Below are positions 8,215 to 27,878 of a stretch of DNA of 64,000 bases, piece after piece. Under the pieces are notes generated by a model. The model ran no database searches. It worked only from the letters and a program-made list of their open reading frames with translations, and was not told the origin of the DNA. The position numbers were made by a program, and so were the translations under genes. The DNA is taken from positions 62,001-126,000 of IMG/VR virus record IMGVR_UViG_3300025364_000003; one strand, written 5' to 3'. The first letter of the stretch is position 1, and every line of letters begins with the position of its first letter.

Positions 8215-8748
8215 ATGACTCAGGATCGACTTCGTAGCACGGGCCGCAAGCCCACTCTCGACGTGACCGGCATCCAGGCGCTCCTGGAGCGCTACATGGA
8301 CGGCAGCAACGTCTCCATCTCCACCCTCGCCGAGGAGCAGAGCCTCACCACGGCCACCGTCCGCAAGTACCTCAAGGCGGCAGGACTCACCCTGCCCCGA
8401 GGCCGAGCCGCTCTCAAGCCCCGTGAGGTGATCAGCGTGCGCACCCTCATGAACCGTATGTCCGTGGAGGATCTTCTCGGTTCGGGCCGTGTGGAGCTTC
8501 TGCGCCGCCGCCTGGAGCTGGGTCAGAGCATGACCAGCCTCGCCACCGAGTTCGGCCTCAGCCGTGACCGGATCCGCAAGTTCCGGGACGAGTCGGGTCT
8601 GGCCCCGGAGGTCAGTGCGGAGGCCGAGGCGCCCGAGAGCCCCGAGGAGCCCACGGTCGAGGAGTCGGCCGAGGAGTCGGCCGAGGAGGCGGTGGCCGAG
8701 ACCACCGAGGATGCCATGGAGACGGCCGAAAGCACCGAGCGGGTCTGA
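8215..8748 (+). CDS. Tandem-HTH protein with sigma4-like C-terminal HTH and acidic tail (paralog 1)
   Basis: HTH1 ISTLAEEQSLTTATVRKYL; HTH2 MTSLATEFGLSRDRIRK; paralog of 27402..27878. Confidence 0.8.
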   Translation: MTQDRLRSTGRKPTLDVTGIQALLERYMDGSNVSISTLAEEQSLTTATVRKYLKAAGLTLPRGRAALKPREVISVRTLMNRMSVEDLLGSGRVELLRRRLELGQSMTSLATEFGLSRDRIRKFRDESGLAPEVSAEAEAPESPEEPTVEESAEESAEEAVAETTEDAMETAESTERV

Positions 8749-8915
8749 GCCAGACTTAGCTGAAAACTAAGAAAGCTTGAAGCTAGAAAACTAAGAAAAA
8801 AGGACCCTTGGTCGAAAGGCCAAGGGTTCGTTGTGTTTAACACTTGATAATAGTTCTTGATAGTTTTATTATAAAAGCTGTTCAGTAGTTGGACGTCCTG
8901 TGATAGATTTGTACT

Positions 8916-9926
8916 ATGGCAAGATCACGAAGAATTTCCAGAAAGAAGACTCCCGAGGTTGTGATTGCCGAGGGTGTTCTAACGAAAACAATTCCTGGAG
9001 ACCTTATCGATAGATTTGAGGTGCCAGAAGGCACTCGTGTTAAAATTGCACGTATTATCAATACGCCGATCGGACTACGTTTTCGTATCATTAATACGAC
9101 CAGGTGGATCCCCCAGGACAGTATCAACTGTGATTTCGATCATAATCTAATCGTCGATTATGTAAAAATCGCAAATGAAAACAGAAACAGGAAATTGACT
9201 CAGTCTGGGGACGGCTTTAACTCTAAAGGGTACAAACCTGATAAGGAGTTTGTTAGAACTGACAGTGTCTCAAGAAGGAGACATGGTAAACAAGGAAGGA
9301 CTAAAACCATGGATAAGAAAGACCTAAAAGATGCTATTGTAGCACTAACTACCGGGGACCGTGTCTCTGTGACGTTTCTTAGCACAATGCCTGGCGGTGC
9401 TTCAAACACCCGTTATGATGGCATTCGTGGCTTTGCTGGCAAGACCGTTGAGGCGACTCTTGTTGAGACGAAGAAGGGACGTGGCAAGGGCGGTTCCCAG
9501 CTGATGGTTCTCAAGACCGATGATGGTGAGAATTTTACGACTGGCACCCCACACTCTGATGTGATTCTGAACTTCACTACTCCTGCGGGTATGGTTGGTC
9601 ATGAGTCCGAGGCGGATGCTCCGAAGTCGTTCGAGACCAATGCTGGTCAGGCAGCTGAGTTGAAGGAGCAGTTCAAGAACCTCGTGGGCACTGTTGGTGC
9701 CACTGTCCGTGTTCAGTCCACCGAAAGTGAATACACGGGTGATTTCACGGTAACCGAAGTGGAGCAGCTCCGTGGCCGACACGGTCAGATTAGACTCCAT
9801 CTACAGGGTGACGATGGTCGGAACTTTACGCTCTGGAGCTACCGTCACAGTGGTGTGGTTACCAGTTTTGAAGTCCTTACTGAGGGCACCACACAGTCTG
9901 CATCTACGAGCACCGAGGCTGCTTGA
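8916..9926 (+). CDS. Hypothetical protein with duplicated beta-barrel domains (second start likely ATG 9309)
   Basis: Strong SD before 9309; internal repeat TGDRVSV..GRGKGG..TDDGENFT versus VGATVRV..LRGRHG..GDDGRNFT. Confidence 0.7.
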   Translation: MARSRRISRKKTPEVVIAEGVLTKTIPGDLIDRFEVPEGTRVKIARIINTPIGLRFRIINTTRWIPQDSINCDFDHNLIVDYVKIANENRNRKLTQSGDGFNSKGYKPDKEFVRTDSVSRRRHGKQGRTKTMDKKDLKDAIVALTTGDRVSVTFLSTMPGGASNTRYDGIRGFAGKTVEATLVETKKGRGKGGSQLMVLKTDDGENFTTGTPHSDVILNFTTPAGMVGHESEADAPKSFETNAGQAAELKEQFKNLVGTVGATVRVQSTESEYTGDFTVTEVEQLRGRHGQIRLHLQGDDGRNFTLWSYRHSGVVTSFEVLTEGTTQSASTSTEAA

Positions 9927-9980
9927 GAATTGCAGTAGCAGACTCATAGGGTTTGATAGGTTTCTGTATCTTACTCTTTA

Positions 9981-10197
9981 GGGCAAGAGCCCGTAGATTC
10001 CCCGGAGGTTGCACCCAAACAGCACGGATAAGGCCGGGTGCTGACTTGGTCCAACGGAAATAAAATTCTGGCCTTAATAGTCTTCTTGGCCTGCCCCCAC
10101 CTAGAAGATGAAGTCGCCTGGGGGAAGTCTTGGTCATGCGGGAGTGCAACCCTGATCTTGTCCAAGGCGAGCGCTCTACGGCCCTCTGAGGGCTTTT
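9981..10197 (+). ncRNA. Candidate structured non-coding RNA (~185-215 nt)
   Basis: No credible ORF; nested long-range helices GGGCAAGA/TCTTGTCC and GGTTGCAC/GTGCAACC, inner hairpins, own terminator GCCCT-CTG-AGGGC-TTTT. Confidence 0.55.
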
Positions 10198-10200
10198 AAT

Positions 10201-10232
10201 AAAGAACCGGGCTCCTGGCCCGGTTCTTTTAT
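10201..10232. terminator. Bidirectional terminator
   Basis: AAAGAACCGGGC-TCCTG-GCCCGGTTCTTTT between convergent transcription units. Confidence 0.85.
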
Positions 10233-10322
10233 TTTGGCGGTCCTGAAAGCTTCTCAGACGTTCAAGAGGACCATCTCCATCGGGTGGCTTTCCGGGATCG
10301 GTCTCATCTCTGGGAGATATTC

Positions 10323-11081
10323 TTATTCCTTTGGGAAGAGGGTTTTGACCCTCTTATTCAAGCTGGCCAGCTTCATCATCTCGCTGTAGAGTTGACCCAC
10401 TTGATTCTGGGTAGCAGTTTTATTGTTGATATCCTTGAGGTACTGTTCCAGCTCTTGGATCAGATTTGTCACCTGGTTGCAGACGGCCATCTTTCGGTTT
10501 GTCTGTTGAGCAAGTCTGCGGGCCTTTCTCTTTTCCTGAGCTTCGCCCCAATTACCGTTTTCCTTTTGTTCCTTGACCCAAGCCTTGCGGGCTTCCTTAT
10601 AAGCTGGAAGAAATCGGCGTTCCTCTAGGACTTCAAGCTTCCTACGGGTTTTCTGCCAGTCGGGATGCCGATGCGTTTCGCTCGGACCATCCACCTCATC
10701 GGTCATGTATCGAAGATGGGGAGCGCCTTTCACCCAAACGATGGTCTTGAAGAAGGACCAGCCTCCCATACGGAGGAACACCTGGCCAGAAGGTGTAATT
10801 GCAAAATTAATCCTGGCATAAGACATGTTCTTAGCCCAATGATTTACTGACTTTTCGACCTCATAAGGCTTAAAATTTGGGTCGGCCTTCTCGGTTCGTT
10901 CTATAGCTTTCAAAAATTCACGGGATGTTCCAGAGAACAATCGAATGTCGTCGTAACAGTAAAGAACCCCGTGGTGTCGAGCGTACTCATTGGCATATTT
11001 CCAAAGGTCAGGAGCCGGAGGAGCCTTGTAAGACTTATAGCAGGGTAGCAGTTCGATTTCGTAGTTCTTTTTATTGTTCAT
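10323..11081 (-). CDS. Hypothetical protein
   Basis: 252-aa ORF with plausible composition and coiled-coil C-terminus. Confidence 0.75.
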   Translation of the reverse strand: MNNKKNYEIELLPCYKSYKAPPAPDLWKYANEYARHHGVLYCYDDIRLFSGTSREFLKAIERTEKADPNFKPYEVEKSVNHWAKNMSYARINFAITPSGQVFLRMGGWSFFKTIVWVKGAPHLRYMTDEVDGPSETHRHPDWQKTRRKLEVLEERRFLPAYKEARKAWVKEQKENGNWGEAQEKRKARRLAQQTNRKMAVCNQVTNLIQELEQYLKDINNKTATQNQVGQLYSEMMKLASLNKRVKTLFPKE

Positions 11082-11374
11082 TATTGCTTCACTTCCTTGG
11101 CGTTAACCGTAGTAGAGATTGAAAAGGTACGAAGTACAGTGCCCTCATAATTCGAGACCTGAACCACTACGGTATCATCCTTGAGCGAGATGACACTGGT
11201 AGGATAATTCCGTAGCTTTGCAGCCATGTGGTAATCGCATACCACTTTACCATTTCGACTCCCTTTTCTGGGTATCTGAAATATACGATATTCAAGGGAA
11301 AGTATGAACCAGATAACGAAAAAAGGCGCCTCCCTAAACGGGGACGCCTTGGTGGCTACTGCTCAAGTGTTCAG

Positions 11375-11755
11375 TTAGCCCCAATCCTCCAGCGCCTTCT
11401 TTACGTCTGCATGGTAGTCCCCCTCATAGGTACCTCTGCCCTTGTGTCCCTCATCGGTGGCCACCACATAGAGATCCTCTGAGCCGTTATTTAGCTCCAC
11501 CCACTGGACAACTGCACCCAGGTAGGGAACCCCATCCCTGTCTTCGGTGGAATAATATTTCGCATCCTGAGGGTCCAGGGGAAAATAAATACGGTCACCT
11601 GGTCGAGGCACGATCGGATATCCAGCTTCGGCATGAACAGAGACGGGTCGGAAAGGATTTTCTCCCCTGAGCTTGGCCATCCTGATCTTTAGGTCTCGGT
11701 TGGCGAAGCCCTCATAATAAATAATATTAAGCTTATGCACCATCAACCTCGACAA
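11375..11755 (-). CDS. Hypothetical protein
   Basis: PIVPRPGDRIYF core; start uncertain. Confidence 0.65.
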   Translation of the reverse strand: MSRLMVHKLNIIYYEGFANRDLKIRMAKLRGENPFRPVSVHAEAGYPIVPRPGDRIYFPLDPQDAKYYSTEDRDGVPYLGAVVQWVELNNGSEDLYVVATDEGHKGRGTYEGDYHADVKKALEDWG

Positions 11756-11942
11756 ACTTATCCGGGGGGTAACAAACCATCAACGAATACCCATTATCCC
11801 ATTCTACGGAAATCTGCCAAAACTGTTGTGGAGCGCCGAGGTAAATTAGTTCCGCTGAGGTGACCGTTCCTTCGGTGCCAGGAGGGATACCCTCTGGGTC
11901 GTCCATTTCGATAAGACGAATTCTCTGTCCTGTTTTAACCAT
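11733..11942 (-). CDS. DUF4314-family protein
   Basis: G.RIRLIEMDDP...PPGTEGTV....ISVEWDNG.SL....D pattern; TAATG coupling. Confidence 0.8.
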   Translation of the reverse strand: MVKTGQRIRLIEMDDPEGIPPGTEGTVTSAELIYLGAPQQFWQISVEWDNGYSLMVCYPPDKFVEVDGA

Positions 11943-12493
11943 TATTTGTTCTCCGGTCCTGTGCAATCGCTTGCATCATGGATAAGGTCAGTATAGCAGT
12001 ACCAGTCCCCCTGGTCAAGCTGATTATATTCGCCCTCGGAAACCGACCACGTAGCCGTTTGGCCTCGATAGGCAATGTCGACCGTCCAATACTCGGGATA
12101 GGTCGTACAGCTTGTGTGACCGTCCGAATCCGTAGTGCAACGAGTCTCCGGGGGGTGATACTCCTTGGAAGTGACCACACCCTCCTGAATATCAGTAAAA
12201 TACTGATATACGGACAATCCAATCATTCCAACAATGAACAAGAAAATCCCGCCAATGGCTAGGTTGTGAAAGCTCGGCATTGCCGGTATAGAAGGCATTG
12301 CTGGCATAGAGAAATGCCGGCGAGACAAAGAATGCTTAAGCGAAGCCTTTTTTTCCTTGGTGCGACGAAGTTCCTCTTCGGCCTTTCGGACCTTTTCGAA
12401 CATTTCCTCATCGTCAGCCTTGGCTCTCGCCAGCTCATCACGGAGCCTGGCGATTTCCTTTTCTTTGGCTGCCAGCGTAGGGTCTCTGTACAT
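11942..12493 (-). CDS. Membrane-anchored protein (coiled coil, one TM helix, exported beta domain)
   Basis: ATG 12493 coupled to the upstream stop; TM LAIGGIFLFIVGMIGLSVY; EGVVTSKEYHP..CT..CT..YW motif. Confidence 0.75.
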   Translation of the reverse strand: MYRDPTLAAKEKEIARLRDELARAKADDEEMFEKVRKAEEELRRTKEKKASLKHSLSRRHFSMPAMPSIPAMPSFHNLAIGGIFLFIVGMIGLSVYQYFTDIQEGVVTSKEYHPPETRCTTDSDGHTSCTTYPEYWTVDIAYRGQTATWSVSEGEYNQLDQGDWYCYTDLIHDASDCTGPENK

Positions 12494-12774
12494 TAGCGCA
12501 CCTTTGCTGAAAGGGGCCAGTACCAAGGGTACCGATGGAAATAGCCAGAGACGAAACCGCCCCTGCCCAGCTTTGGAAGCTTCATTCCATTTGGGTCGTC
12601 CGCCTCGTCTGGGGGATGCTGGCACTTGTGCCCGGCGATCATCAGTGCTTTTGGCTCCTCCAGGAGCAGAGACACGAAGTGTAGGTTGAGCCATCCAGAA
12701 CGGTCAACATGGAACGTAAGATAAAAGGGACCGACTTTTACATCGGTCTCGATATCATGTCGCTTGCGGTTCAT
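12493..12774 (-). CDS. Hypothetical protein
   Basis: 93-aa ORF inside the minus-strand operon. Confidence 0.65.
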   Translation of the reverse strand: MNRKRHDIETDVKVGPFYLTFHVDRSGWLNLHFVSLLLEEPKALMIAGHKCQHPPDEADDPNGMKLPKLGRGGFVSGYFHRYPWYWPLSAKVR

Positions 12775-12785
12775 TTTATACTAGT

Positions 12786-12977
12786 CTAATAAGAGGTATT
12801 GAGGATGCACTCGTGAAAATGATAGTTCGATTCGGAGATGTAAGCCCTGGGCAATCGGACCTTCTCCTGGGCCATGTGCTTGCACATGGCTTCTTCGGCC
12901 TTTTCTTCGGAGCTGAAGACGCCCAGGAAAGTCATATCCTTGTCGGGGTGCGACTCTACGTAGGTAACTGCCCACAC
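12786..12977 (-). CDS. Small protein with LGVFSSEEKA motif (common phage beta-beta-alpha family)
   Basis: WAVTY...FLGVFSSEEKAEEA; start uncertain. Confidence 0.6.
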   Translation of the reverse strand: MWAVTYVESHPDKDMTFLGVFSSEEKAEEAMCKHMAQEKVRLPRAYISESNYHFHECILNTSY

Positions 12978-13478
12978 TTCCTGATCATCGTCCTCGTCCT
13001 GGACGTATTTGGTGGAAAAATCCTCCTGAAGGATTTTGCTCTTGAACTCGATGATACATCATCGCCCAGGACCGCCGTTGCCCGCCTCATGATGTAAAAA
13101 TAGGATACCACATGGGCATCCTGTTTTGAACTCATTAACGGATTTTGCGGACAAGAACCTCGTGGAAATCAAAACACCTCGATCACGAGGACGTAGCGGT
13201 CGCTGTGCCTGGTATAGAGCTTGCTCTTGGCGTGAGCCTCAGAACGAGCCTTGGTACGCCACCAGTGCTTGACGCCATCGATGCTATAGTGTAGTTCGAA
13301 CATTTCACACTCCCGTAAGATGTGCGAGAATCGTTGCCGTGGTACAGGGGTCGAACGACCCCAACCGCCACATGAGTTTAAACATCCAGAGTCGCATCCT
13401 TTCTTTTCCTCTCATTAGTCCTTATAAGGTAGCACAGCTAGAGGAAGATGTAAACCTATTTTAGGATATTGGTGATTC

Positions 13479-13853
13479 TCAGAACGTGGAGGTATCGATA
13501 TAGCCACGACGGAAATAGTTGGCCAAAGCCTTGGTCTCATCCGAAGTGAGCTTGTCCAGAGCCTTCGCCACCAGGTTATCAGCGTCCTTACTGTAGGGGC
13601 TCCTGATGGAGTAGGTAGCACCGACCTCGGCTCTAAGAGCATCGGTCACAGCCTTGCCGCCTCGCTCCTCCAGTTGACAGAGGCTCGGGGCGACCCGCCA
13701 CTTGGCTCCAACCTTGGTTCGACCGCCCCTTCCTCGGCCCTCCAGAGTCTGGACCAGCAAGGTCTTTCTGTTGATCTTCACGATCTGACCAAGGGTCTGT
13801 TCGCCGTTCGGACGTCCGAACGTGACCACATCATCGATTCTGAATCCACTCAT
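13479..13853 (-). CDS. Hypothetical protein, SH3-like N-terminus with RG loop
   Basis: FRIDDVVTF...GQIVKINRKTLLVQT..GRGRGG...WRVAPSL. Confidence 0.75.
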   Translation of the reverse strand: MSGFRIDDVVTFGRPNGEQTLGQIVKINRKTLLVQTLEGRGRGGRTKVGAKWRVAPSLCQLEERGGKAVTDALRAEVGATYSIRSPYSKDADNLVAKALDKLTSDETKALANYFRRGYIDTSTF

Positions 13854-13864
13854 TTTATTACCTT

Positions 13865-14092
13865 TCAGTCTAGGGGACCTTCCCCGTCATTGGGGGCAAG
13901 CCCTCGAAATTCGTTGCAGAGGTGGAAGAAATCCGTGAGACTATGCCGCTTTGCAAACAAAACTCGGTCTCCCACAAGGCCAACCTCGAAGGTACCGCCG
14001 GTATTTCGAGCGATGCGCTGCTCGAAGGTAACCCTACCAAGCTTATTCTGCTCGGCGATTTCCTTCACATCCTCATGAGTTAGACTTGCCAT
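13865..14092 (-). CDS. Small hypothetical protein
   Basis: GAGG SD before ATG 14092. Confidence 0.6.
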   Translation of the reverse strand: MASLTHEDVKEIAEQNKLGRVTFEQRIARNTGGTFEVGLVGDRVLFAKRHSLTDFFHLCNEFRGLAPNDGEGPLD

Positions 14093-14099
14093 GTTTTCC

Positions 14100-14345
14100 T
14101 CAGGAGCAGTTAGGAACCTTCGGACCATCGGGTTTGGAAAATAGCGAGATGACTTCGAAATGGTCCGGATGTTGAGATCTTACTCCTGGACCTGGTGCGT
14201 CTCCTGGGTCTCCACAGCACGCTCTGCGATGCTCAGCCCCCACCAGATAGCATATCCGATACCACCCATGGTCGCCAGGCTCAACATGATACAAAAAGCG
14301 AACCAGAGCCCAAACCGAACCCAACTCGCTTAAACGTCCTGCCAA
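14100..14345 (-). CDS. Small hypothetical protein
   Basis: 81-aa ORF filling the gap in the operon. Confidence 0.5.
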   Translation of the reverse strand: MAGRLSELGSVWALVRFLYHVEPGDHGWYRICYLVGAEHRRACCGDPGDAPGPGVRSQHPDHFEVISLFSKPDGPKVPNCS

Positions 14346-14373
14346 AATGATCTTCCCTCATTTTATTCCTTCT

Positions 14374-14988
14374 TCAGTTGGAAGCCGCATGGCTTCCATC
14401 TTCGTTCAACCAAGGGCACTTCTCGTTGTAGAGAGCCGTAGCCTTGTCGCCCAGCTTCTCCATGAGAGAGCGAATCTCATTCATCCGTCGATTGCCAGCT
14501 GCGTAGACGCTGTAGTCATCGGAGTAGTGGTAATACCAATCGTGATTGGTGACCAGGCGCTCGAACTTTTCCCAATCCGTCTCGATCATGGTCTCCCAAA
14601 CCGTGAACACGTCATGGACAGCTGCCGGGTAGGTACAACCGTCGACCGACGGCAGCTTTCCCTGAAGCTCTCCAAGCTTACGGTTACGGGCATCACGGAG
14701 GAGCTTTTCCTCGCAGCGAATGTCCTCCGCACGGCCACGGTAGCGCTTCTGGAACCTCGGAAGCTTTTCCAGCTCTTGGATCCTTCGTCGGCACTCCTCG
14801 TCCACCGGAGCTGTCAACTTCTTCCAGGCATCGGACTTGCGCTGGTTAGCCTCGCCGCAGCGCTTGACGGCTTCCTCACGGAGAGCTGTGCGCTCCGTCT
14901 TGGACAGCTGCTTGTAATCCTCGAAGTAATAGCTCTGGCCATCGACTCGGACGAAATCGAAAAACTGACCGAAGGTGTGCCTGTACAT
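14374..14988 (-). CDS. Hypothetical protein with HDWYYHYSDD motif
   Basis: Own promoter (GG-TTCAAA-17-TATATT) and GAGGAG SD; C-terminal HDW.Y.YSDD motif recurrent in phage proteins. Confidence 0.8.
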   Translation of the reverse strand: MYRHTFGQFFDFVRVDGQSYYFEDYKQLSKTERTALREEAVKRCGEANQRKSDAWKKLTAPVDEECRRRIQELEKLPRFQKRYRGRAEDIRCEEKLLRDARNRKLGELQGKLPSVDGCTYPAAVHDVFTVWETMIETDWEKFERLVTNHDWYYHYSDDYSVYAAGNRRMNEIRSLMEKLGDKATALYNEKCPWLNEDGSHAASN

Positions 14989-15075
14989 TCGCTATCTCCT
15001 CTTTCCTTGATATGCTACGAATATAGCATATTGCCAGAGGGGTTTGAACCTATTAGCAAAAGGTTTGGGTTACAG

Positions 15076-15363: not shown

Positions 15364-15395
15364 GTTCGTTTCCTGTGCGAAAGGTGGAACTGGAT

Positions 15396-19559: not shown

Positions 19560-19573
19560 TTTCTTTCCTCGGT

Positions 19574-20174: not shown

Positions 20175-20188
20175 GTTCTGAATATACC

Positions 20189-20604: not shown

Positions 20605-20616
20605 TATTGCTCTTTC

Positions 20617-20808: not shown

Positions 20809-20966
20809 GGTTCCCATATTAGTAAATAAGTCATCAGGTGTGAACCGAATATGGATTTTATCCATGAATCAGACCCATATAGAAAAATACTGTTGTCCCC
20901 ATTTGGTGACCGGCCTTTTTATTTAATTCGGTGCAAACTGAGGAAAGCCCGTGATAACTTAGAATC

Positions 20967-21482
20967 ACGGACGCACTTGTAGAAAAGGCTCGTCGATTCG
21001 CCCTGGAACATCATGGGGACCAGAGATATGGTGAACATCCGTACAGTCCCCATCTGGGGGAGGTGGCTGATTTGGCTCGGCCCTGGGGTCCGGTAGCGGA
21101 AGCGGTTGCCTGGCTTCACGATGTGGTCGAGGATACGGACGTGTCGAGCTACGACGTGTTCATGTCTTTCGGGGATCCTGTGGCGTCCTGTGTCTGGATC
21201 GTTACGGATCCAGGCGGTAGGAACCGCAAGGAAAAGAAGCTCCGACTTCACGAGAGACTCAAAGAAATCGTAGCCAACGATGCTAAGGGTTATGTTCAGT
21301 ACCGTCCAGCCCTCCTTGTCAAGGTCTGTGACCGCCTGGCTAACCTACGAGCAGGCAAGGCCGGCAATCCAGGGCTCCTGAAGATGTACCGTAAGGAGCA
21401 TACTGCGTTCAAGGATGCAGCATATGTGCCAGGTCTCTGCGATCGGCTTTGGAACGAAATCGAAGAAATCCTAGCCGATTAA
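20967..21482 (+). CDS. HD-domain small alarmone hydrolase-like protein (SpoT/Mesh1 type) with ACG at the start position
   Basis: KARRFALEHH..QRYG..PY..HL..V, LHDVVEDT, LLVKVCDRLAN; frame open from 20958 with ACG exactly 6 nt after the promoter -10. Confidence 0.85.
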   Translation, partial: TDALVEKARRFALEHHGDQRYGEHPYSPHLGEVADLARPWGPVAEAVAWLHDVVEDTDVSSYDVFMSFGDPVASCVWIVTDPGGRNRKEKKLRLHERLKEIVANDAKGYVQYRPALLVKVCDRLANLRAGKAGNPGLLKMYRKEHTAFKDAAYVPGLCDRLWNEIEEILAD

Positions 21483-21528
21483 CAGAAATAGGTTCAAACC
21501 TAGTCTAGGGCATGGTATATTCATAAGC

Positions 21529-22119
21529 ATGAAGGTACACGTCAACAGCTTCGTCAAGCGTCAGACCCCGGAGTCGGAGTTTTCTCATTTCGAGGGACCT
21601 CCAGGTTGTGAGGACGTCTGGGAAAACCTCCGTGTTTCGATCGAGCTAATGATCGAGCAGGATCATGGCATCGAACCCGGTTACCGGGATGGCGTGATTC
21701 TCGTTCACGTGAACCCCCAGCATTTCTTTTCTGGCGTGGTTCAGCTCAAGGAGGGTGACCACCTTGTGGGAGAGTTCAAGGCCCGTCGACCCGGCGAGTC
21801 TCCTCGGAAGTCGATCGGCGTGGTTGGTGCAGAAAAGATGCCCGCCAAGACCGCTTTCGTGGTTCTCTACGCTTCCACCGTGCTTGCGGAGGGTGGAGAT
21901 AACGAGCTTCCGGCCGAGGAAGGGAATTGGGAGATCATTTCCTTGAATGCCAGTCCGGTCGAGGGTGAAATGCCCATCAGTCCGATGGTGCTTCTTCACA
22001 ACCACTTCGGTAGCGACGGTGGCACCAGTACCAACCTAAGCGATTCTGAGCTGGTCGCCATGCTCCGTGAGTCTTTCGAGTTCTGGAAGGACAAGGCAAT
22101 GGTAGCCCCGAAGGGTTGA
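21529..22119 (+). CDS. DUF3228-like protein (leaderless)
   Basis: F..RQ, GYRDG, VVLY, WEIISLNA, E.P..P...HN.FG..GG, FEFW..KA pattern. Confidence 0.65.
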   Translation: MKVHVNSFVKRQTPESEFSHFEGPPGCEDVWENLRVSIELMIEQDHGIEPGYRDGVILVHVNPQHFFSGVVQLKEGDHLVGEFKARRPGESPRKSIGVVGAEKMPAKTAFVVLYASTVLAEGGDNELPAEEGNWEIISLNASPVEGEMPISPMVLLHNHFGSDGGTSTNLSDSELVAMLRESFEFWKDKAMVAPKG

Positions 22120-22337
22120 ACATGTCCCAAAAAAGCCCCGAATATCGAAATGGATACGGAGACGCAAAAGCTGATCTCCTACGGCTAGTCAAGGAGGCTC
22201 TCAAGAGCCTCCATGAGGCTTGCCAAAATAATGGCTTCTGCGACCCCTCCGAAAAAGATAAGGAGCTTCTGAGGCTCCGTGAGGCCGAGCTACGCCGCAT
22301 TAGGGGCATGATCAAGGCATTAAAGCCAAAAGAGTGA
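22116..22337 (+). CDS. Small helical protein
   Basis: TTGA overlap; EYRNGY motif. Confidence 0.65.
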   Translation: MNMSQKSPEYRNGYGDAKADLLRLVKEALKSLHEACQNNGFCDPSEKDKELLRLREAELRRIRGMIKALKPKE

Positions 22338-22379
22338 ATTCTCTTTACCTGGGAAACCGGAAAAGGTAAGTTGTAGCAC

Positions 22380-23153
22380 ATGAGTATCCCGAATCGTCCG
22401 TTTGGTGTCGAACTTGAGTTCAACAGTGCACCTCCACCGGAAGTGCTGGCGTGGCTTCTCAGAGATAAGGGCATCAAGGCTCATGATGACGCCGTTGCCC
22501 GTGATCATTCGTTTTGGCTCGTGCATGATGATGCCTCTATCACTGGACCTGGGGTGCATATTGAGGTTTCTTCCCCGATCCTCCGAGGAAAGAAAGGTTT
22601 GGCCGAGGTTCGTTCAGTCTGTCGTTTTCTCACCAAGTTGGGCTGTAAGACGAATTCGTCTTGTGGGCTTCATGTCCACGTGAGTGATAGCAGAATCACC
22701 AATTCGACTCTGATAAACATTCTCAAGCGCTATGCAGAAAATGAAGAATTGATCGACTCTTGGATGACAAAGAGTCGTCGTGGAAACCGAAACCCATTTT
22801 GTCGTTCTCACAAGAGGGACTGGAAAGATATGGTTGCATGTCTTTCCGACAAGGAAGAGAATCTTAGATTGCGTTTTGGTGAACGTTTTGAGGTTTCTTC
22901 TACTGTTGGTGGTGATAAGATCAACTTCGATTCCAATTACGCCACCCTGGAATTCCGTCACCATCATGGGACACTCAACTCCACAGAAGTCTCCAATTGG
23001 GTACAATTCTGCCTAAACTTCGTGGAGGTTTCTGCCGATCTCACCCCTGGAACCCGACGAGCAACCAAGCGCACCAGGGACACTGGACCTCTGATGGGTT
23101 TGTCCACAAATATTCGGAATCATTTCACTTACCAGGCCGAGCGTCTTCGCTAA
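22380..23153 (+). CDS. Putative amidoligase (Amidoligase_2 family)
   Basis: FGVELE, D.SI, EVSSPIL, NSSCGLHVHV, TLEFRHHHGTLN motifs. Confidence 0.88.
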   Translation: MSIPNRPFGVELEFNSAPPPEVLAWLLRDKGIKAHDDAVARDHSFWLVHDDASITGPGVHIEVSSPILRGKKGLAEVRSVCRFLTKLGCKTNSSCGLHVHVSDSRITNSTLINILKRYAENEELIDSWMTKSRRGNRNPFCRSHKRDWKDMVACLSDKEENLRLRFGERFEVSSTVGGDKINFDSNYATLEFRHHHGTLNSTEVSNWVQFCLNFVEVSADLTPGTRRATKRTRDTGPLMGLSTNIRNHFTYQAERLR

Positions 23154-23206
23154 CGAATAACAGTTATTTGGTGTAAATCTTAGAACGTCTATAATAGGAT
23201 AATAAC

Positions 23207-23452
23207 ATGCTCATCAAGCTCAAAGACCGCAACGGAACCATCCCGGACTTCGATCGCCAGCTCGGGGAGGCTCGATACTGTCTGCCGGACATGGAAATGT
23301 ATCACCGAGCCTGTCTCGTCCTGTACGACACCGAGGCCAACAAGTTCACCCTGTTCACCCGTGATCTGGTCACTTCGGAGTACATGGTGACTCAGGTGGA
23401 GGGAACCCGTCGGGGCTTGCAGTACAAAAAGTTCTGGGAAAAAGCTTCGTAA
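23207..23452 (+). CDS. Small hypothetical protein (leaderless)
   Basis: GG-TGTAAA-17-TAGGAT-6-ATG. Confidence 0.7.
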   Translation: MLIKLKDRNGTIPDFDRQLGEARYCLPDMEMYHRACLVLYDTEANKFTLFTRDLVTSEYMVTQVEGTRRGLQYKKFWEKAS

Positions 23453-23491
23453 TAGGTTCACAACCAGGCTTTGGCCTGATATATTAAGACC

Positions 23492-23656
23492 ATGGCCAAG
23501 CGAAACAAGAAGAACGTCTCGGACGTGAAGCGACGCAGTGCCGCTGCCGTGGCCGCTATCCTCAAGACTGGTGCTGGTAAGCACGGGGACCGTCGCTTGA
23601 AGCGGATGAAGACCCGTGCGGCCCAGAAGCGGGCTGCCTTCCGAGACTGGAGGTGA
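23492..23656 (+). CDS. Very basic 54-aa protein (MAKRNKK...GAGKHGDRRLKR...)
   Basis: Below the ORF-track cutoff; leaderless GG-TTCACA-17-TATATT-6-ATG promoter; stop overlaps the next start. Confidence 0.75.
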   Translation: MAKRNKKNVSDVKRRSAAAVAAILKTGAGKHGDRRLKRMKTRAAQKRAAFRDWR

Positions 23657-23853
23657 GCATTACTGAACGGGAAGAAGAAGCCTTCAAGAAGGGCTACGAG
23701 CGCTGTCGGCTGGATATGGCCCGAGAGCTGGGTCAACTCATTGCGTATTACTACAACAAAGGTCAGACCAATGGTGGTGATGCGCTCCGTCATGCTAGCA
23801 CCGTGCTGCGAGCTGTGAAGCCTGGACAGAAGCCTTGGAATCCAGATATTTGA
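23653..23853 (+). CDS. Small helical protein
   Basis: GTGA overlap; FKKGYE motif. Confidence 0.65.
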   Translation: MSITEREEEAFKKGYERCRLDMARELGQLIAYYYNKGQTNGGDALRHASTVLRAVKPGQKPWNPDI

Positions 23854-23879
23854 ACCGATTAATAATCGGTTCAAATATC
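23845..23879. repeat. Perfect 16-bp inverted repeat containing back-to-back GGTTCAAA elements
   Basis: GATATTTGAACCGATT-AAT-AATCGGTTCAAATATC. Confidence 0.9.
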
Positions 23880-23907
23880 GAGAAATTCGGGATAAGCTAA
23901 ATTTAAG

Positions 23908-24243
23908 ATGACCAAGCCCACCTTGATATTCTACACCACGTTCAAGAACGTTCCTTATTCCGATGAGGAGTGGGAGCGTGCCAATAAGTGGCGTGCCAAA
24001 TTGGCCCAGGACAATCCGACCTGGGCTGAGAAGCACCCCGAAGACGTAGAGCCGCTGAAAACCCGTCCCGTTCATTCGTTCAGATATGGTCACGCATGTT
24101 TCTCTCACGAGGAAGCCCGTAAGGTCTGTGAGCAAGCCTTGGAAAGTGGTGTCCAGATGGTGACCTACTCAGCTTGGGACAGTAATAAGCAGGTAGGGGA
24201 GTGGTCTAGGCGTCAGGGTGGACATTGGTACCAGAGTAAATAA
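23908..24243 (+). CDS. Hypothetical protein
   Basis: 111-aa ORF downstream of the promoter at 23870. Confidence 0.75.
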   Translation: MTKPTLIFYTTFKNVPYSDEEWERANKWRAKLAQDNPTWAEKHPEDVEPLKTRPVHSFRYGHACFSHEEARKVCEQALESGVQMVTYSAWDSNKQVGEWSRRQGGHWYQSK

Positions 24244-24508
24244 TACTAGTATTTGGGTTCACATTCATCTTTACAAGCGCACCACCAAGCGCATTCAGAA
24301 CTTGAATTCTGAGCTTCGCAGGCTTCGTGCCAAGGCTAAGGCTATGAAGCCGGGTCTTGACGACATCCATGCCTTGGAGGAGATGTATCCCGAAGAAAAG
24401 GCTATCATTTGGGGGCGTACCGAATACATCTGAGGTATCAAATATGCAGTTAGCCGAATTTTCTTGAAATAGGTTCAGAATCCAACAAATATAGGACATA
24501 TTAAGAAC

Positions 24509-24772
24509 ATGAGTAACCGACGTAAGCGTAAGCAGGCCCGTAAGCAGGCTCGCCGTGAGGAGCGTAAGACTCGTTTGGTCGAGCTGGAGTCCCGTCGCCT
24601 CCAGGAGGAGGATGCTGGGCTGGAGATGAGCACTGAGCGTGTCTCCCCGGTTCTGGTGGACGAGTGGGATGACTTCGACCCGGAGTACGAGGAGCGCATC
24701 CGCAAGGACCGTGCCATCAAGGATCGTCGTGCCCGTAAGCAGGAGCTTCTCAACGAGGCTCTGAGCCGCTGA
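24509..24772 (+). CDS. Highly charged small protein (paralog 1)
   Basis: Leaderless promoter; C-terminus EWDD..EERIRKDR..RKQELLNEAL. Confidence 0.75.
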   Translation: MSNRRKRKQARKQARREERKTRLVELESRRLQEEDAGLEMSTERVSPVLVDEWDDFDPEYEERIRKDRAIKDRRARKQELLNEALSR

Positions 24773-24822
24773 AAAAACCTAAAAAGGTTTAAAACCCCAC
24801 CCTAATAAGGTATATTCTAATC

Positions 24823-25140
24823 ATGGCAGACAACAGGACCCGTAAGCTCGACCGCAAGGCCATCAAGCGTCTCCAGAAGGCCATTCAGCGTCTCGATCGT
24901 CAGATCGAGCGGGAGATCGAAACGCACCCTGACGGAGCCGAGTCCCCGTTCCTCTTCGACTTGAACGACGTGAGGTGGGTTCTGGAGCTACAGCTACAGC
25001 GACTCGACCAGCAGATGGACCCTCCGGGCGAGTGGGACGATCGGGACGAGTCCCGTGAGGACCGAATCCGGGAGGACCGCAGCCGTAAGGCTTGTCGTGC
25101 GGACAAGCAGTTTTTGTTCGATGAGGCCCTGGGTCTTTAA
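24823..25140 (+). CDS. Highly charged small protein (paralog 2)
   Basis: Leaderless promoter; C-terminus EWDD..EDRIREDR..DKQFLFDEAL. Confidence 0.75.
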   Translation: MADNRTRKLDRKAIKRLQKAIQRLDRQIEREIETHPDGAESPFLFDLNDVRWVLELQLQRLDQQMDPPGEWDDRDESREDRIREDRSRKACRADKQFLFDEALGL

Positions 25141-25157
25141 AAGAAAAGAAGGTAAAA

Positions 25158-25442
25158 ATGGACGCTCTAGACAAGATCAAGGCCATGAGGGGTGACGCTA
25201 AACTTTCTCCCAAGGTTGCCATGTGTTTGGCACGGGAAATGCACGATTTGCCGGATGACCGACTCAAGGAAGCCTGGCGAGAGCTTACCGTGAGCAAGGC
25301 CCTTGAAGGGAGTGAGCTTTTGCTCACTCTGCATCCTTACATCGAGGTACTGATGGTGAATTTGGCCTCGGGTCTTCCTCGCCCGACCTGGGAAGAGACA
25401 CTGTCAGGCAAGGATCCTGCGGCTGGGCAGACCGTGGAGTGA
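25158..25442 (+). CDS. Stand-alone homolog of the MoxR C-terminal domain
   Basis: MHDLP..AW..LHPYIEVLMV..ASG matches MHDCP..AW..VHPYIEKLMV..ASG in 2557..3876. Confidence 0.75.
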   Translation: MDALDKIKAMRGDAKLSPKVAMCLAREMHDLPDDRLKEAWRELTVSKALEGSELLLTLHPYIEVLMVNLASGLPRPTWEETLSGKDPAAGQTVE

Positions 25443-25535
25443 CACAAGGGCTGAATCCGTTCGGCTCCAAATCCCCAAAAAGGTTCAAACCTGGCCTGAA
25501 TATGATATATTCAAGGCTAAGGAAGGGAGACCTAC

Positions 25536-25910
25536 ATGGGTTTTGAAATGCGTGACGAGTACATGGTTCGAGGTGAGGACGTGGACCACTGGTGCCCTGC
25601 TTGTGGTCACAAGATCGTTCCAATGGATACCTCGGATCGTCGGGGATGGTGGGAACACGAGAGCGTCGAGGCTTTCGGGCTCTGTGATGTGGCCGACGAG
25701 CTGGAGTCTCCGGTGATGCACGTGGAGTTCCTGCTGGCCTGGGACGACATGACCTGGGATACCGAGATTCTGGAAGTTCCGCCCATTCTCCACCACGAGG
25801 ACTGCACCGACGAAAATCGAATCGATTGGTTCCATCGGGTTCATGGAGGTGAAGCTAGGTACAGGAAGCTCGCTATGGCTGCCGTGTACCATCTTCAGCC
25901 TTACGCATAG
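25536..25910 (+). CDS. Putative Zn-binding acidic protein
   Basis: CPACG..HE...C motif; own promoter and SD. Confidence 0.7.
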   Translation: MGFEMRDEYMVRGEDVDHWCPACGHKIVPMDTSDRRGWWEHESVEAFGLCDVADELESPVMHVEFLLAWDDMTWDTEILEVPPILHHEDCTDENRIDWFHRVHGGEARYRKLAMAAVYHLQPYA

Positions 25911-26126
25911 GTTTAGGTTGGGCCTCATCAGCCCATAGTAGGGGTGGCGAGTTCCCTATGAACAAGTGAGGTGATGCTCACAAAAAAAGCCCCTAGCCTC
26001 GGAGAGGCCGGCGGTGGGAGCCGTAGCGGGACCCGTGGGGCCTGAAAAGGTGACGAAGCGGTACCGTACCCACAATTCTATCCATATTAGGTTCAAACCC
26101 CAAGGGGGATAGGATATTCTAGGACC

Positions 26127-26423
26127 ATGAAGACGATCACGAAGGCAGACCTCACCAAGATCCGAAGCAATCTTGCCCTGCACGCCCTACCGGAGGATGC
26201 GGTCAGCTACAAGTGGGAGCAGGTTTCCAGCGCCATGGGAACGGTTCCTATGCTTGAGACCGTTCGGGGGCTCAAGATCGTTCTGTTTCTCGTCAAAAAG
26301 GCCGAGGTCATAATGACGAGCGAGGTTGCTCTCCGGGGCTCTGAGGGCACCTTTGTGGGCTTCGAGAAGATTGAGACTATCAAGAACAAGGCCAATGAAC
26401 TTTTGGCCGTTTTGGAGGGATGA
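26127..26423 (+). CDS. Hypothetical protein (leaderless)
   Basis: GG-TTCAAA-17-TATTCT-6-ATG. Confidence 0.75.
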   Translation: MKTITKADLTKIRSNLALHALPEDAVSYKWEQVSSAMGTVPMLETVRGLKIVLFLVKKAEVIMTSEVALRGSEGTFVGFEKIETIKNKANELLAVLEG

Positions 26424-26533
26424 TTTATGGGTGTGTCGAGACGCATCTCGGAAATTGTCCTCCGTAAACAAAAAAGGGTTCAAAGATTAGCCAGACTATG
26501 GCATTCTAAGAACCATAGAGAGGGAGACAACGA

Positions 26534-26815
26534 ATGACCTGGTACAGCAGCAAGCGAGCGACGACGGTTCTGGACGACGGTGAGGGGATGGAAGCGTGCG
26601 TCTACCACCGAACGAAGGTGGTCCGGTGGGGCCGAGGAACGGTGACGCTCAACTCTGGTGGACACGAGACGTACACCACCAAGAAGCGCATGAACGAGGT
26701 CTCTGAGGAGTACCGCCTGGGCTTCCGGGTCTTCCAGAAGGACCACCAGTGGTTCGTCAAGCTCCCCACGGGTTCGGTGGTGGAGTTCCGGGATGGGATG
26801 ACCTTTTCCTACTGA
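26534..26815 (+). CDS. Conserved-type phage hypothetical protein
   Basis: YH.T.VV...TLNSGG..T.TTK.RMN...FQKD..WFV motif; promoter and SD. Confidence 0.75.
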   Translation: MTWYSSKRATTVLDDGEGMEACVYHRTKVVRWGRGTVTLNSGGHETYTTKKRMNEVSEEYRLGFRVFQKDHQWFVKLPTGSVVEFRDGMTFSY

Positions 26816-26872
26816 CCCGAAAAAAAGAAAAAGGCGGTTCAGAAAATAACCGCCCCATGCTATAACAAGAAC

Positions 26873-27184
26873 ATAGGCAAGAGGCTAACCCAAGGAAGGC
26901 AGGGCCGCACCATTGGACAAGTGACACCTAGCTAGCTTCGTTGTTCTCGTCGAGCTAGTATTAGGACACCCGAGAGGGCCAGTAAAACAAGCCCCCATAA
27001 GTTACCTACCCCATTAGGGATGGCAGGGGGTGCAAGCGAGGACTCGGGGAGAGCCAAATGGCCTCGGCTCTCCCTTAAAGGAACCGGCCAAAGGTTATGG
27101 GTCTAAGTGCTAGGTAAAAGACCTGAGGCGGTGGGACGTTGAACGTCCCCGGAGAGCACTCAAGCTAGGGTCTGCCCAGTCTAC
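26873..27184 (+). ncRNA. Candidate ~310-nt structured ncRNA co-transcribed ahead of tRNA-Ala
   Basis: Promoter GG-TTCAGA-17-TATAAC but no ORF; 5'/3' end pairing and several strong internal stems. Confidence 0.6.
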
Positions 27185-27257
27185 GGGGTCGTAGCTCAAT
27201 TGGGAGAGCACCTGTTTTGCACGCAGGGGGTTGAGGGTTCAAGTCCCTCCGATTCCA
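27185..27257 (+). tRNA. trnA: tRNA-Ala(UGC)
   Basis: GGGGTCG/CGATTCC acceptor stem with G3:U70, loop TTTGCAC, GGTTCAAGTCC T-arm; no encoded CCA. Confidence 0.95.
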
Positions 27258-27401
27258 TTTAAGATGAACCTCAAAAAATTGATAATCGGTTCATAATCCT
27301 GACCAAGTCTGTGATTCTTAGAATCATGGAGGTTGAGGCTAGCTCCTAAAAAGCCTCCCAACAACCAACCAAGTTCACAGAGAAACCAAAGGAAACAAAT
27401 C

Positions 27402-27878
27402 ATGCCCAAGCTCACTTCCACCGGTCGCAAGCCCGCTCTCGATCTCACCGGCGTCGAGTCCCTTCTCGGTCGCTACTTCTCGGAGGACCAGCCCGGCGTC
27501 GAGGCCCTCGCCAGCGAGTTCGAGATCACCCCGGCCACCGTCCGCAAGTACCTCAAGCTCGCCCTCGGCAGCCTTCCCCGTGGCCGTGCGGCCCTGCTCC
27601 CCCGTGAGCCCCGCAACGTCAAGGTGCTCATGAACGGCATCTCGACCGAGGATCTTCTCGGTGCCGGCCGGGTCGAGCTTCTCCTGCGTCACCGTGAGGC
27701 CGGCGTCAGCCTGACCGCCCTCGCCAGCGAGTTCGGGATCAGTCGTGACCGGGTGACCAAGCTCGTCCGGGCCCACGAGCCGGAGAGCGAGCCGGAGGTC
27801 GCCGAGGCGTCGCCGGAGCCGGAGAGCGTCCAGGTGCCCGATTCGGAGCCGGTCTGCCTCGACGAGGCGGTGGCCTGA
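27402..27878 (+). CDS. Tandem-HTH protein with sigma4-like C-terminal HTH and acidic tail (paralog 2)
   Basis: STGRKPALDLTG, ATVRKYLK, LPRGRAAL.PRE, LLG.GRVELL, LTALASEFGISRDRV shared with 8215..8748. Confidence 0.8.
   Translation: MPKLTSTGRKPALDLTGVESLLGRYFSEDQPGVEALASEFEITPATVRKYLKLALGSLPRGRAALLPREPRNVKVLMNGISTEDLLGAGRVELLLRHREAGVSLTALASEFGISRDRVTKLVRAHEPESEPEVAEASPEPESVQVPDSEPVCLDEAVA

What the first reader, a model, noticed from the sequence alone, without database searches (positions are those of the whole stretch)
8215..27878. Two stand-alone HTH proteins whose C-domain resembles the missing sigma4: possible split-sigma system
Seen: paralogs 8215..8748 and 27402..27878 have VELLRRRLELGQSMTSLATEFGLSRDRIRK and VELLLRHREAGVSLTALASEFGISRDRVTK. 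These line up with sigma4 (KVLRMRF…TLEEVG.DF.VTRERIRQ), including F-x-(L/I)-(S/T)-R-(D/E)-R. Known: sigma70 R584 and E585 read positions -31 and -33. Both phage proteins have Asp at the E585-equivalent site, and the phage promoters depart from TTGACA at exactly -33 (G to C/T) and -31 (C to N). Each protein also has a second N-terminal HTH and an acidic tail. Inference: two truncated sigmas, two sigma4-like proteins and an altered -35 motif could form a two-component sigma. Caution: many generic HTHs resemble sigma4.
Basis: partly seen in the sequence, partly recalled or inferred. Interest (0 to 1): 0.85.

Follow-up and report, generated by a model that had tools for sequence, protein, structure and literature searches.

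The report
Truncated phage sigmas with linked double-HTH proteins
A huge (about 461 kb) phage encodes two sigma factors that lack the part that reads the -35 promoter box, together with two small double helix-turn-helix proteins that are genetically linked to them in related phages; these may supply the missing function, but the claimed sigma4 ancestry of those proteins is not supported.

Summary
ORFs 8215-8748 and 27402-27878 are paralogs (53% identity, E 4e-48). Two primary-like sigma genes (18106-18804 minus strand, 34304-35023 plus strand) stop right after region 4.1. A promoter tAATnGGTTCAnA-N17-TAnnnT, usually with an extended -10 TGn, occurs 27 times against 1.3 expected.

New evidence:
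- The truncation point is identical in about 20 sigma clusters, so this is a conserved sigma-delta-4.2 family.
- The HTH family is small (about 36 clusters) and found only in this clade of metagenomic phages.
- An HTH gene lies next to the truncated sigma in three lineages and 4-15 kb away in three more; a fourth (48.6-kb) contig carries both genes more than 10 kb apart.
- The promoter is conserved in all lineages examined.

The sigma4 resemblance of the C-domain is not specific. Pfam ranks HTH_28, HTH_7 and HTH_23 above Sigma70_r4, and all C-domain scores are below cut-off. Foldseek places recombinase, transposase and homeodomain HTHs first, with sigma4 at ranks 43-50. The "Asp reads -33" idea fails, because that residue varies while the promoter does not. 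The invariant helix is in the N-domain.

Best reading, at moderate confidence: an activator-assisted or two-component sigma, analogous to T4 MotA/AsiA or to split sigmas. The strong rival is that host sigma reads these T4-early-like promoters. Nothing is shown biochemically.

The parts
8215..8748 (+). HTH-a paralog (177 aa). It has an N-terminal STGRKP arm plus HTH, an LPRGRAA arm, a second HTH and an acidic disordered tail.
   Evidence: (HTH_7 30.7 bits, above the 23.8 cut-off).
27402..27878 (+). HTH-b-like paralog (158 aa) with the same two-HTH architecture and a shorter acidic tail.
   Evidence: Closest to the short HTH-b group (59% to P0028).
18106..18804 (-). Sigma factor 1 (232 aa): regions 1.2, 2, 3 and the 4.1 helix. 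Region 4.2 is absent.
34304..35023 (+). Sigma factor 2 (239 aa), truncated at the same point.
8101..8131 (+). Promoter of HTH-a: AGTTCATA-N17-TATTCT preceded by TGT. It is followed by an A/C-rich leader of about 80 nt.
27288..27318 (+). Promoter of HTH-b: GGTTCATA-N17-GATTCT preceded by TGT, followed by a long A/C-rich leader.
18811..18840 (-). Promoter of sigma 1, a variant with canonical TTGACA at -35 and a weak -10 TAGGGT. The transcript is leaderless.
   Evidence: Orthologous sigma promoters in L034, L009 and L010 also have G at -33.
34267..34297 (+). Promoter of sigma 2: GGTTCATA-N17-TAATAT, leaderless.
6551..34297 (.). Array of about 25 promoters tAATnGGTTCAnA-N17-TAtatT. They lie on the minus strand from 6.5 to 20.8 kb and on the plus strand from 21.5 to 34.3 kb.

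Best explanation
The two ORFs belong to a phage-clade-specific family of sequence-specific DNA-binding proteins. Each has two arm-plus-HTH modules (STGRxP and LPRGRA arms). I propose they work with a conserved family of primary-like sigma factors that have lost region 4.2.

Proposed mechanism:
1. The truncated sigma binds host core RNA polymerase and reads the TGn/-10 elements. Its regions 2.4 and 3.0 are primary-like.
2. It cannot read a -35 box.
3. The double-HTH protein binds the conserved upstream element tAATnGGTTCAnA, which lies exactly where a -35 box would be. It anchors or activates the polymerase, possibly through the retained 4.1 helix or the beta-flap.

Functionally this is a two-component sigma, or a 'sigma appropriation by replacement'. 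It is not a case of sigma4 homology.

Shown here: the two protein families, the conserved truncation, the gene linkage and the promoter. Inferred: DNA binding to this element, contact with sigma or polymerase, and which HTH reads the DNA.
For: - All about 20 truncated sigmas end at the same alignment column, and the 4.1 helix stays nearly invariant.
- There is no hidden 4.2 exon or downstream 4.2 ORF.
- The residues that read the extended -10 (the PVH..E motif) are retained, and TGn is present in 70-85% of promoters in three groups of related contigs.
- The -35-like element is conserved in five lineage groups, with C rather than G at -33 in 57-76% of sites, plus GG at -37/-36 and tAAT upstream. 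This is an unusual optimum for primary sigma region 4.2, which is invariant in bacteria.
- HTH-b lies directly upstream of the truncated sigma in L012 and L024, and one ORF away in L025. The genes are 4-15 kb apart in the window, L010 and L034. The 48.6-kb contig carries both (P0008 and P0045), more than 10 kb apart.
- The HTH family is absent from GTDB genomes and INPHARED.
- 15 of the 21 invariant residues lie in the N-terminal arm-HTH-arm segment, which fits an invariant DNA target.
- Precedents for split or assisted sigmas exist: SPO1 gp33/34, T4 gp55/33, SigO-RsoA and Tn916 Sig7/8, and T4 MotA/AsiA.
Against: - There is no biochemical or co-folding evidence.
- The HTH genes and sigma 2 themselves sit behind GGTTCAnA promoters. 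Host holoenzyme probably reads them at least initially.
- T4 early promoters are likewise UP/-35/TGn/-10 promoters with extra phage-specific consensus, and host sigma70 reads them.
- One lineage shows two HTH genes but no sigma in about 46 kb.
- Other truncated-sigma lineages in IMG/VR have no HTH-family gene within 10 kb.
- Linkage may partly reflect conserved synteny within one phage clade.
- Sigma lacking region 4.2 is known to work alone at extended -10 promoters (my knowledge: Kumar et al. 1993).
Confidence: 0.35

Rival explanations
1. The GGTTCAnA/TGn/-10 promoters are very strong early promoters read by the host primary-sigma holoenzyme, as T4 early promoters are. The truncated sigmas act later and alone, on extended -10 or -35-less promoters elsewhere in the 461-kb genome. 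The double-HTH proteins are separate regulators, for example repressors that shut off early promoters, or regulators of the neighbouring KaiC-like ATPase module.
For: - All four regulator genes sit behind promoters with a primary-sigma-type -10: three of the GGTTCAnA class, and sigma 1 with a canonical TTGACA.
- The promoters carry A/T tracts upstream, a -35-like box, TGn and a -10, like the T4 early 'uber' promoters.
- These promoters are nearly absent from the structural-gene half of the window.
- Truncated sigmas exist in other phages without this HTH family.
- HTH-a is always paired with a divergent KaiC-like ATPase gene.
Against: - C is preferred over G at -33, and GG at -37/-36 is conserved. 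Neither is expected for a promoter optimised for the invariant primary sigma region 4.2.
- HTH-b/sigma adjacency recurs in three lineages.
- No separate late promoter class could be defined in the window.
Confidence: 0.3
2. The truncated sigmas are mainly competitors for host core polymerase. They displace host sigma, abolish -35-dependent host transcription, and leave only TGn-containing phage promoters active. The HTH proteins are not needed for this.
For: - The sigmas are about 55% identical to bacterial RpoD in the core-binding and -10-reading regions.
- TGn is common in the phage promoters.
- Sigma lacking region 4.2 is active at extended -10 promoters (my knowledge).
Against: - It leaves the strict conservation and fixed 17-bp spacing of GGTTCAnA unexplained.
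- It does not explain the linkage with the HTH family.
Confidence: 0.12
3. The HTH proteins are DNA-binding modules of a recombination, transposition or packaging function (Hin, Sin, Tc3 or IS21 type) and have nothing to do with transcription.
For: - The best Pfam and Foldseek neighbours are resolvase, transposase and homeodomain HTHs.
- The Gly-Arg arm before the HTH resembles that of Hin (my knowledge).
Against: - No recombinase, transposase or terminase domain is fused to them or conserved beside them.
- There are two conserved paralogs per genome, both in the early regulatory region and next to sigma genes.
Confidence: 0.06
4. The truncated sigmas are pseudogenes, assembly errors, or genes interrupted by an intron or intein.
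For: None beyond the truncation itself.
Against: - The same end point occurs in about 20 clusters at 50-76% identity, from many samples.
- The sequence is identical in two independent assemblies.
- No 4.2-coding sequence exists anywhere in the window.
Confidence: 0.01

Closest known systems
T4 MotA/AsiA sigma appropriation (middle promoters)
   Same: The promoter keeps a primary-sigma -10, often with TGn. The -35 box is replaced by a phage-specific element read by a phage DNA-binding activator, while sigma region 4 is taken out of action.
   Different: Here region 4.2 is deleted from a phage-encoded sigma rather than remodelled on the host sigma. There is no sequence similarity to MotA or AsiA (no such Pfam hit). 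The element lies at -37 to -30, whereas the MotA box is centred at -30.
Split sigma factors: SPO1 gp33/gp34, T4 gp55/gp33, B. subtilis SigO-RsoA, Tn916 Sig7/Sig8
   Same: Two separately encoded proteins jointly provide sigma function. The genes are often adjacent, and positive feedback from their own promoter is known for Sig7/8.
   Different: Those pairs divide region 2 and region 4 of small sigmas. Here one partner is a nearly complete primary-like sigma (1.2 to 4.1). The other is a double HTH that is not demonstrably sigma4. Joint action is not shown.
PafBC 'sigma adaptation' in mycobacteria
   Same: An activator binds upstream of a -10-only promoter and substitutes for -35 recognition (abstract of PMC8635444, listed).
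   Different: PafBC works with an intact host sigma region 4 and is a WYL-domain protein. There is no homology.
E. coli sigma70 lacking region 4.2 at extended -10 promoters
   Same: A primary sigma without region 4.2 can still initiate at TGn promoters (my knowledge: Kumar et al. 1993).
   Different: That is a laboratory truncation. Here the truncation is natural, conserved and phage-encoded.
Hin/Sin resolvase and Tc3/paired bipartite DNA-binding domains
   Same: A Gly-Arg minor-groove arm is followed by a three-helix HTH, in tandem as in Tc3 or DUX4 double homeodomains.
   Different: There is no catalytic domain. Similarity is marginal (Foldseek E >= 0.14).

Membership tests
Sigma-70 region 4 (PF04545), for the HTH C-domain | Score above the Pfam gathering cut-off (24.1 bits) | tested here: not met
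   HTH2 scores 13.4 bits (E 0.058) and HTH1 has no hit. Of 16 C-domains, 8 hit Sigma70_r4 at the E <= 1 limit (best E 0.0017), behind HTH_28, HTH_7 and HTH_23; no C-domain reaches a Pfam cut-off.
Sigma-70 region 4, for the HTH C-domain | Profile-profile or fold similarity that singles out sigma4 among HTH folds | tested here: not met
   hhalign against RpoD gives 20 columns at probability 30%. Foldseek puts sigma4 chains only at ranks 43-50, behind Sin, Tc3, IstA, homeodomains and KorA/ArdK. A narrow RpoD sigma4 HMM gives E about 1.
Sigma-70 family, for genes 18106-18804 and 34304-35023 | Regions 2 and 3 present | tested here: met
   Sigma70_r2 E 5e-22 and 1e-17; Sigma70_r3 E 4e-20 and 7e-12. 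About 55% identity to bacterial RpoD.
Sigma-70 family, for the same two genes | Region 4.2 HTH present | tested here: not met
   The ORFs stop after region 4.1. No 4.2 sequence is found elsewhere in the window.
Split (two-subunit) sigma factor | [quoted passage not shown] | not testable with these tools
   This needs pull-down and in vitro transcription experiments. No multimer prediction was available.
Split (two-subunit) sigma factor | The genes of the two parts are linked | tested here: met
   Adjacent in L012, L024 and L025. Within 4-15 kb in the window, L010 and L034; both genes also on the 48.6-kb contig, more than 10 kb apart. Not seen in about 46 kb of one lineage.
Split (two-subunit) sigma factor | The second part carries the missing sigma region | tested here: inconclusive
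   There is a collinear but weak match of the whole HTH protein to sigma3 plus sigma4 (probability 21%; N-domain against sigma3.1 probability 48%). Generic HTH families match at least as well.
HTH_7 (resolvase/Hin-type HTH, PF02796) | Score above the gathering cut-off (23.8 bits) | tested here: met
   HTH1 scores 30.7 bits over residues 10-55. HTH2 scores 23.1 bits, just below. The Gly-Arg-x-Pro arm is invariant.
T4 MotA/AsiA | Sequence homology to MotA or AsiA | tested here: not met
   No such family appears in Pfam or PHROGs scans, run at E up to 10 (Pfam) and 0.01 (PHROGs).
T4 MotA/AsiA | Promoter with a primary-sigma -10 and a phage-specific element in place of the -35 box | tested here: met
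   tAATnGGTTCAnA-N17-(TGn)TAtaaT in five lineage groups.

The most novel reading that the evidence does not exclude
A clade of huge phages has rebuilt promoter recognition in modules. A primary-like sigma has shed its -35-reading HTH. A non-homologous double-HTH protein of Hin/homeodomain type docks on the remaining 4.1 helix or the beta-flap and reads a new element, GGTTCA, at the -35 position. The two sigma/HTH pairs would form a temporal cascade that starts from a host-type TTGACA promoter on sigma 1.
Probability: 0.25. Interest if true: 0.8.

Novelty: new variant of a known kind. Interest (0 to 1): 0.6.

Why it matters
Sigma region 4.2 is among the most conserved DNA-reading modules in bacteria. 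A natural, conserved family of primary-like sigmas without it has not, as far as I could find, been described.

If the linked double-HTH proteins supply -35 recognition in trans, this would be a new route to promoter-specificity switching, alongside T4 sigma appropriation and the known split sigmas. It would also give orthogonal promoter/sigma parts for synthetic biology.

The whole hypothesis can be tested with four small proteins, one promoter and a laboratory core RNA polymerase.

If the rival holds, the truncated sigmas are still a clean natural test of how far extended -10 promoters can replace -35 recognition.

Tried and rejected
- **Hidden region 4.2 exon, frameshift or intron.** tblastn with E. 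coli region 4 and a RpoD sigma4 HMM against all six frames found only the two 4.1 stubs.
- **A conserved small HTH ORF just downstream of the sigma in this clade.** None found; the downstream genes differ between lineages.
- **Known phage relatives.** No DNA or protein match in INPHARED.
- **Host or prophage origin of the HTH family.** No relative in GTDB genomes.
- **Sigma4 homology.** Tested with Pfam, hhalign, a PDB sequence search and Foldseek on the full-length and the C-domain model. All results were marginal and non-specific.
- **Exhaustive profile search for sigma-derived remote relatives.** It returned only multi-HTH repeat proteins; none of the ten scanned has a sigma region 2.
- **Covariation between the 'E585-equivalent' residue and the -33 base.** The residue varies (D, E, R, K, S, Q) while -33 stays mostly C.
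- **tRNA T-loops as the source of GGTTCAAA.** There are only 4 tRNAs, and none overlaps a listed promoter match.
- **A distinct late promoter in the 36-64 kb half.** No shared motif was found by eye.
- **Sigma in the rhizosphere lineage.** I walked about 46 kb and found none. One look-up was wasted on wrong coordinates.
- **The small ORF coupled to truncated sigmas in L095/L100/L104 as a sigma 4.2 relative.** hhalign gives no support.


Full report
**What the window is**

The window is part of a huge phage. Its proteins occur on contigs of up to 461,086 bp, and the same DNA is in IMG/VR as a 460,987-bp genome. It carries a portal gene with an inserted HNH module, a GroEL-like gene and four tRNAs. 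It has no DNA or protein match among deposited phage genomes.

The left half (about 6-35 kb, GC 50-57%) is packed with small genes. The right half (GC 35-42%) holds structural genes. The junction at about 36 kb is present in two independent assemblies.

**Checking the observation**

ORFs 8215-8748 (177 aa) and 27402-27878 (158 aa) are paralogs: 53% identity, E 4e-48.

An AlphaFold model built on a 37-sequence alignment has mean pLDDT 83, about 95 in the folded parts. It shows two three-helix HTH units and a disordered acidic tail.

Two sigma genes, 18106-18804 (-) and 34304-35023 (+), are 53% identical to each other. Pfam finds regions 2 and 3 in both and region 1.2 in the first, at its cut-off. 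Both end right after the region 4.1 helix. No region 4.2 coding sequence exists downstream, or anywhere in the window in any frame.

The promoter motif is real. GGTTYANA-N15-19-TANNNT occurs 27 times against 1.27 expected, nearly all between 6.5 and 34.3 kb. The matches lie on the minus strand up to 20.8 kb and on the plus strand from 21.5 kb.

**The sigma family**

A database search returns about 25 clusters of 221-237 aa proteins at 50-76% identity that lack Pfam region 4. Three slightly longer members (253-299 aa) owe their length to N-terminal extensions. Next in the ranking come full-length bacterial RpoD/SigA at about 55% identity.

In an alignment, all 20 truncated members end at the same column, just after LR(L/M)RF(G/S)(L/I)GE. 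The 4.1 helix remains almost invariant, and so do the extended -10-reading residues of region 3.0. This is a conserved, selected truncation and not decay.

IMG/VR holds further, more distant truncated sigmas (41-45% identity) in other phage groups: L072/L078, L093, and L095/L100/L104.

**The HTH family**

Only 36 clusters exist among 5.8 billion proteins, all metagenomic. An exhaustive profile search of 1.84 billion representatives finds about 11 family representatives. There is no relative in GTDB genomes.

Two orthologous groups recur:
- **HTH-a** usually has an acidic tail. It always lies divergent from a KaiC-like ATPase gene, and a homolog of the 336-aa protein follows it.
- **HTH-b** is short, 127-131 aa.

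Invariant residues cluster in the N-terminal half: S-T-G-R-x-P, then A..RKYL in the recognition helix, then L-P-R-G. The C-domain has only six invariant positions.

**Is the C-domain sigma4?**

The evidence does not single out sigma4:
- Pfam on the whole proteins gives HTH_7, HTH_11 and HTH_28 above cut-off. Sigma70_r4 reaches only E 0.058.
- Across 16 C-domains, HTH_28 hits 16, HTH_7 hits 12, HTH_23 hits 10 and Sigma70_r4 hits 8, at the scan's E limit of 1; no C-domain reaches a Pfam cut-off.
- A PDB sequence search puts KorA/ArdK first (E 0.015) and SigA at E 0.24.
- hhalign against RpoD gives a collinear but weak match of the whole protein to sigma3 plus sigma4 (probability 21%). The C-domain alone matches 20 columns of the 4.2 recognition helix at 30%. 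The strongest piece is the N-domain against sigma 3.1, at 48%.
- Foldseek with the full model finds nothing significant. The best hit is a SigA chain at E 0.14, and several other sigma chains, DUX4, Tc3 and IstA follow.
- Foldseek with the C-domain model (pLDDT 84) puts Rv2018, the Sin recombinase DNA-binding domain, homeodomains, Tc3, IstA and ArdK first. Sigma4 appears only at ranks 43-50.
- Ten of the remote relatives were scanned against Pfam. All are arrays of small HTH modules, and none has sigma region 2.

The recognition helix S-R-D-R-(I/V)-R-(K/R) does resemble T-R-E-R-I-R-Q. Even so, the domain is a generic three-helix HTH, and sigma4 membership is not met.

**Linkage**

| Contig or lineage | Arrangement |
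|---|---|
| L012 | HTH-b (9333-9725) directly upstream of the truncated sigma (10001-10705) |
| L024 | HTH-a 9995-10579 (+), sigma 12037-12744 (-), HTH-b 13006-13401 (-) |
| L025 | Same order, with one ORF between HTH-b and sigma |
| L010 | 4 kb apart |
| Window | 7 and 10 kb apart |
| 507-kb contig (L034) | 14 kb apart |
| 48.6-kb contig | Carries both genes, more than 10 kb apart |
| Rhizosphere lineage | Two HTH genes, no sigma in about 46 kb |
| Distant truncated-sigma lineages in IMG/VR | No HTH-family gene within 10 kb and essentially no GGTTCA promoters (0-2 matches per locus) |

The HTH family and the GGTTCA promoter therefore travel together. Truncated sigmas can exist without either.

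**The promoter**

With only G-TT-n-A and TAnnnT forced, five lineage groups give the same consensus: tAAT-n-GGTTCAnA, then 13 variable bases, then t-n-TG-n-TAtaaT.
- The -33 base is C in 57-76% of sites, T in 14-27% and G in 5-17%.
- TGn is present in 70-85% of promoters in three groups of related contigs, but in only 39% (window) and 31% (rhizosphere group).
- Many genes start 6-8 nt after the -10, often as ACCATG. These transcripts would be leaderless.

The HTH genes and sigma 2 sit behind this same promoter class. The HTH genes, unlike most others, have A/C-rich leaders of 80-100 nt.

The sigma 1 promoter and its three orthologs are a variant, with G at -33 (TTGACA in the window) and a weaker TAnGGT -10. 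Being orthologous, they count as one event rather than four.

**The residue-to-base argument**

The Asp aligned with sigma70 E585 is replaced by E, R, K, S or Q in other family members. The promoters of those lineages keep the same -35-like element. If the family reads this element, the invariant N-domain helix and its arm are the better candidates.

**Interpretation**

Something must read GGTTCAnA at a fixed 17-bp distance from the -10. The truncated sigma cannot do this.

One possibility is that host primary sigma reads it. T4 early promoters are a precedent: UP/-35/TGn/-10 promoters carrying extra phage-specific consensus, yet read by host sigma70. The other possibility is a phage factor.

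The linked, clade-restricted double-HTH family is the obvious candidate for that factor. T4 middle promoters (a MotA box plus a sigma70 -10, about half with TGn) and the split sigmas are functional precedents.

I rate the assisted-sigma model at about 0.35, the host-sigma model at about 0.30, and a pure competitor role for the truncated sigma at about 0.12. None of this is shown experimentally.

**Side lead**

In L095, L100 and L104 the truncated sigma is followed by a conserved ORF of about 90 aa. Its ATG overlaps the sigma stop codon, and in L095 it has its own Shine-Dalgarno sequence. It looks HTH-like by eye, but Pfam and hhalign give no support. If it proves real, companion proteins for truncated sigmas may be a wider theme.

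Noticed in passing
window 21491-21531, 23455-23495, 33939-33979 and about 15 other promoters: The start codon lies 6-8 nt after the -10 element, often as ACCATG, so many early-region mRNAs would be leaderless. The same holds in related contigs.
   Followed up: partly
window 8132-8214 and 27319-27401; also upstream of the HTH genes in L005, L010, L007, L011, L024 and L025: Unlike their leaderless neighbours, both HTH paralogs in most lineages have A/C-rich leaders of 80-100 nt with repeated ACCAA/AACCAA units. HTH-a leaders in the window, L005 and L010 begin with a conserved CAT(C/T)GACGGG(G/C)C stretch. This may be a post-transcriptional control element.
   Followed up: no
window 18811-18840 (-); L034 about 4251; L009 and L010 upstream of the sigma gene: The sigma 1 promoter and its orthologs carry G at -33 (TTGACA or TTGAAA type) and a weak TAnGGT -10, unlike the bulk promoters with C at -33. 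This could mark a host-sigma-dependent entry point to a cascade, or simply shared ancestry.
   Followed up: partly
L095:10719-10988, L104:10677-10946, L100:10732-11016: In a different phage lineage, the truncated sigma (with a 17-27 aa non-HTH tail) is followed by a conserved ORF of about 90 aa. Its ATG overlaps the sigma stop codon, and L095 shows a Shine-Dalgarno sequence. A GroEL-like gene lies just upstream of the sigma in L095 and L100. The ORF may be a companion of the truncated sigma, but homology to region 4.2 is not detectable.
   Followed up: partly
window 50164-50985 and 50972-54199: The portal gene (1075 aa) has an HNH-endonuclease-like insertion in its N-terminal part. A GIY-YIG ORF just upstream begins with the same 11 codons as the portal gene (MARNESFFQRL), as if a homing endonuclease had inserted and duplicated the gene start.
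   Followed up: no
window about 35500-36200: GC content shifts sharply from 50-57% on the left to 35-42% on the right. The junction is identical in two independent assemblies, so it is not a chimera created by the window.
   Followed up: partly
window 7070-7852 (-) and 8916-9926 (+): A KaiC/RadA-like ATPase gene lies divergent from HTH-a. A 336-aa protein without any Pfam family lies downstream. Both are syntenic with HTH-a in every lineage examined.
   Followed up: no
L011, L033 and L035 (rhizosphere lineage): There is a cluster of five or more Amidoligase_2 genes plus GATase- and GGACT-like genes downstream of HTH-b. There is also a 227-aa protein with three CCHC zinc-knuckle-like repeats (L035:12664-13347).
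   Followed up: no
window 15666-16576 (-) and 27185-27257 (+): Four tRNA genes (Glu, Leu, Lys, Ala). The Ala tRNA lies immediately upstream of the HTH-b promoter.
   Followed up: no
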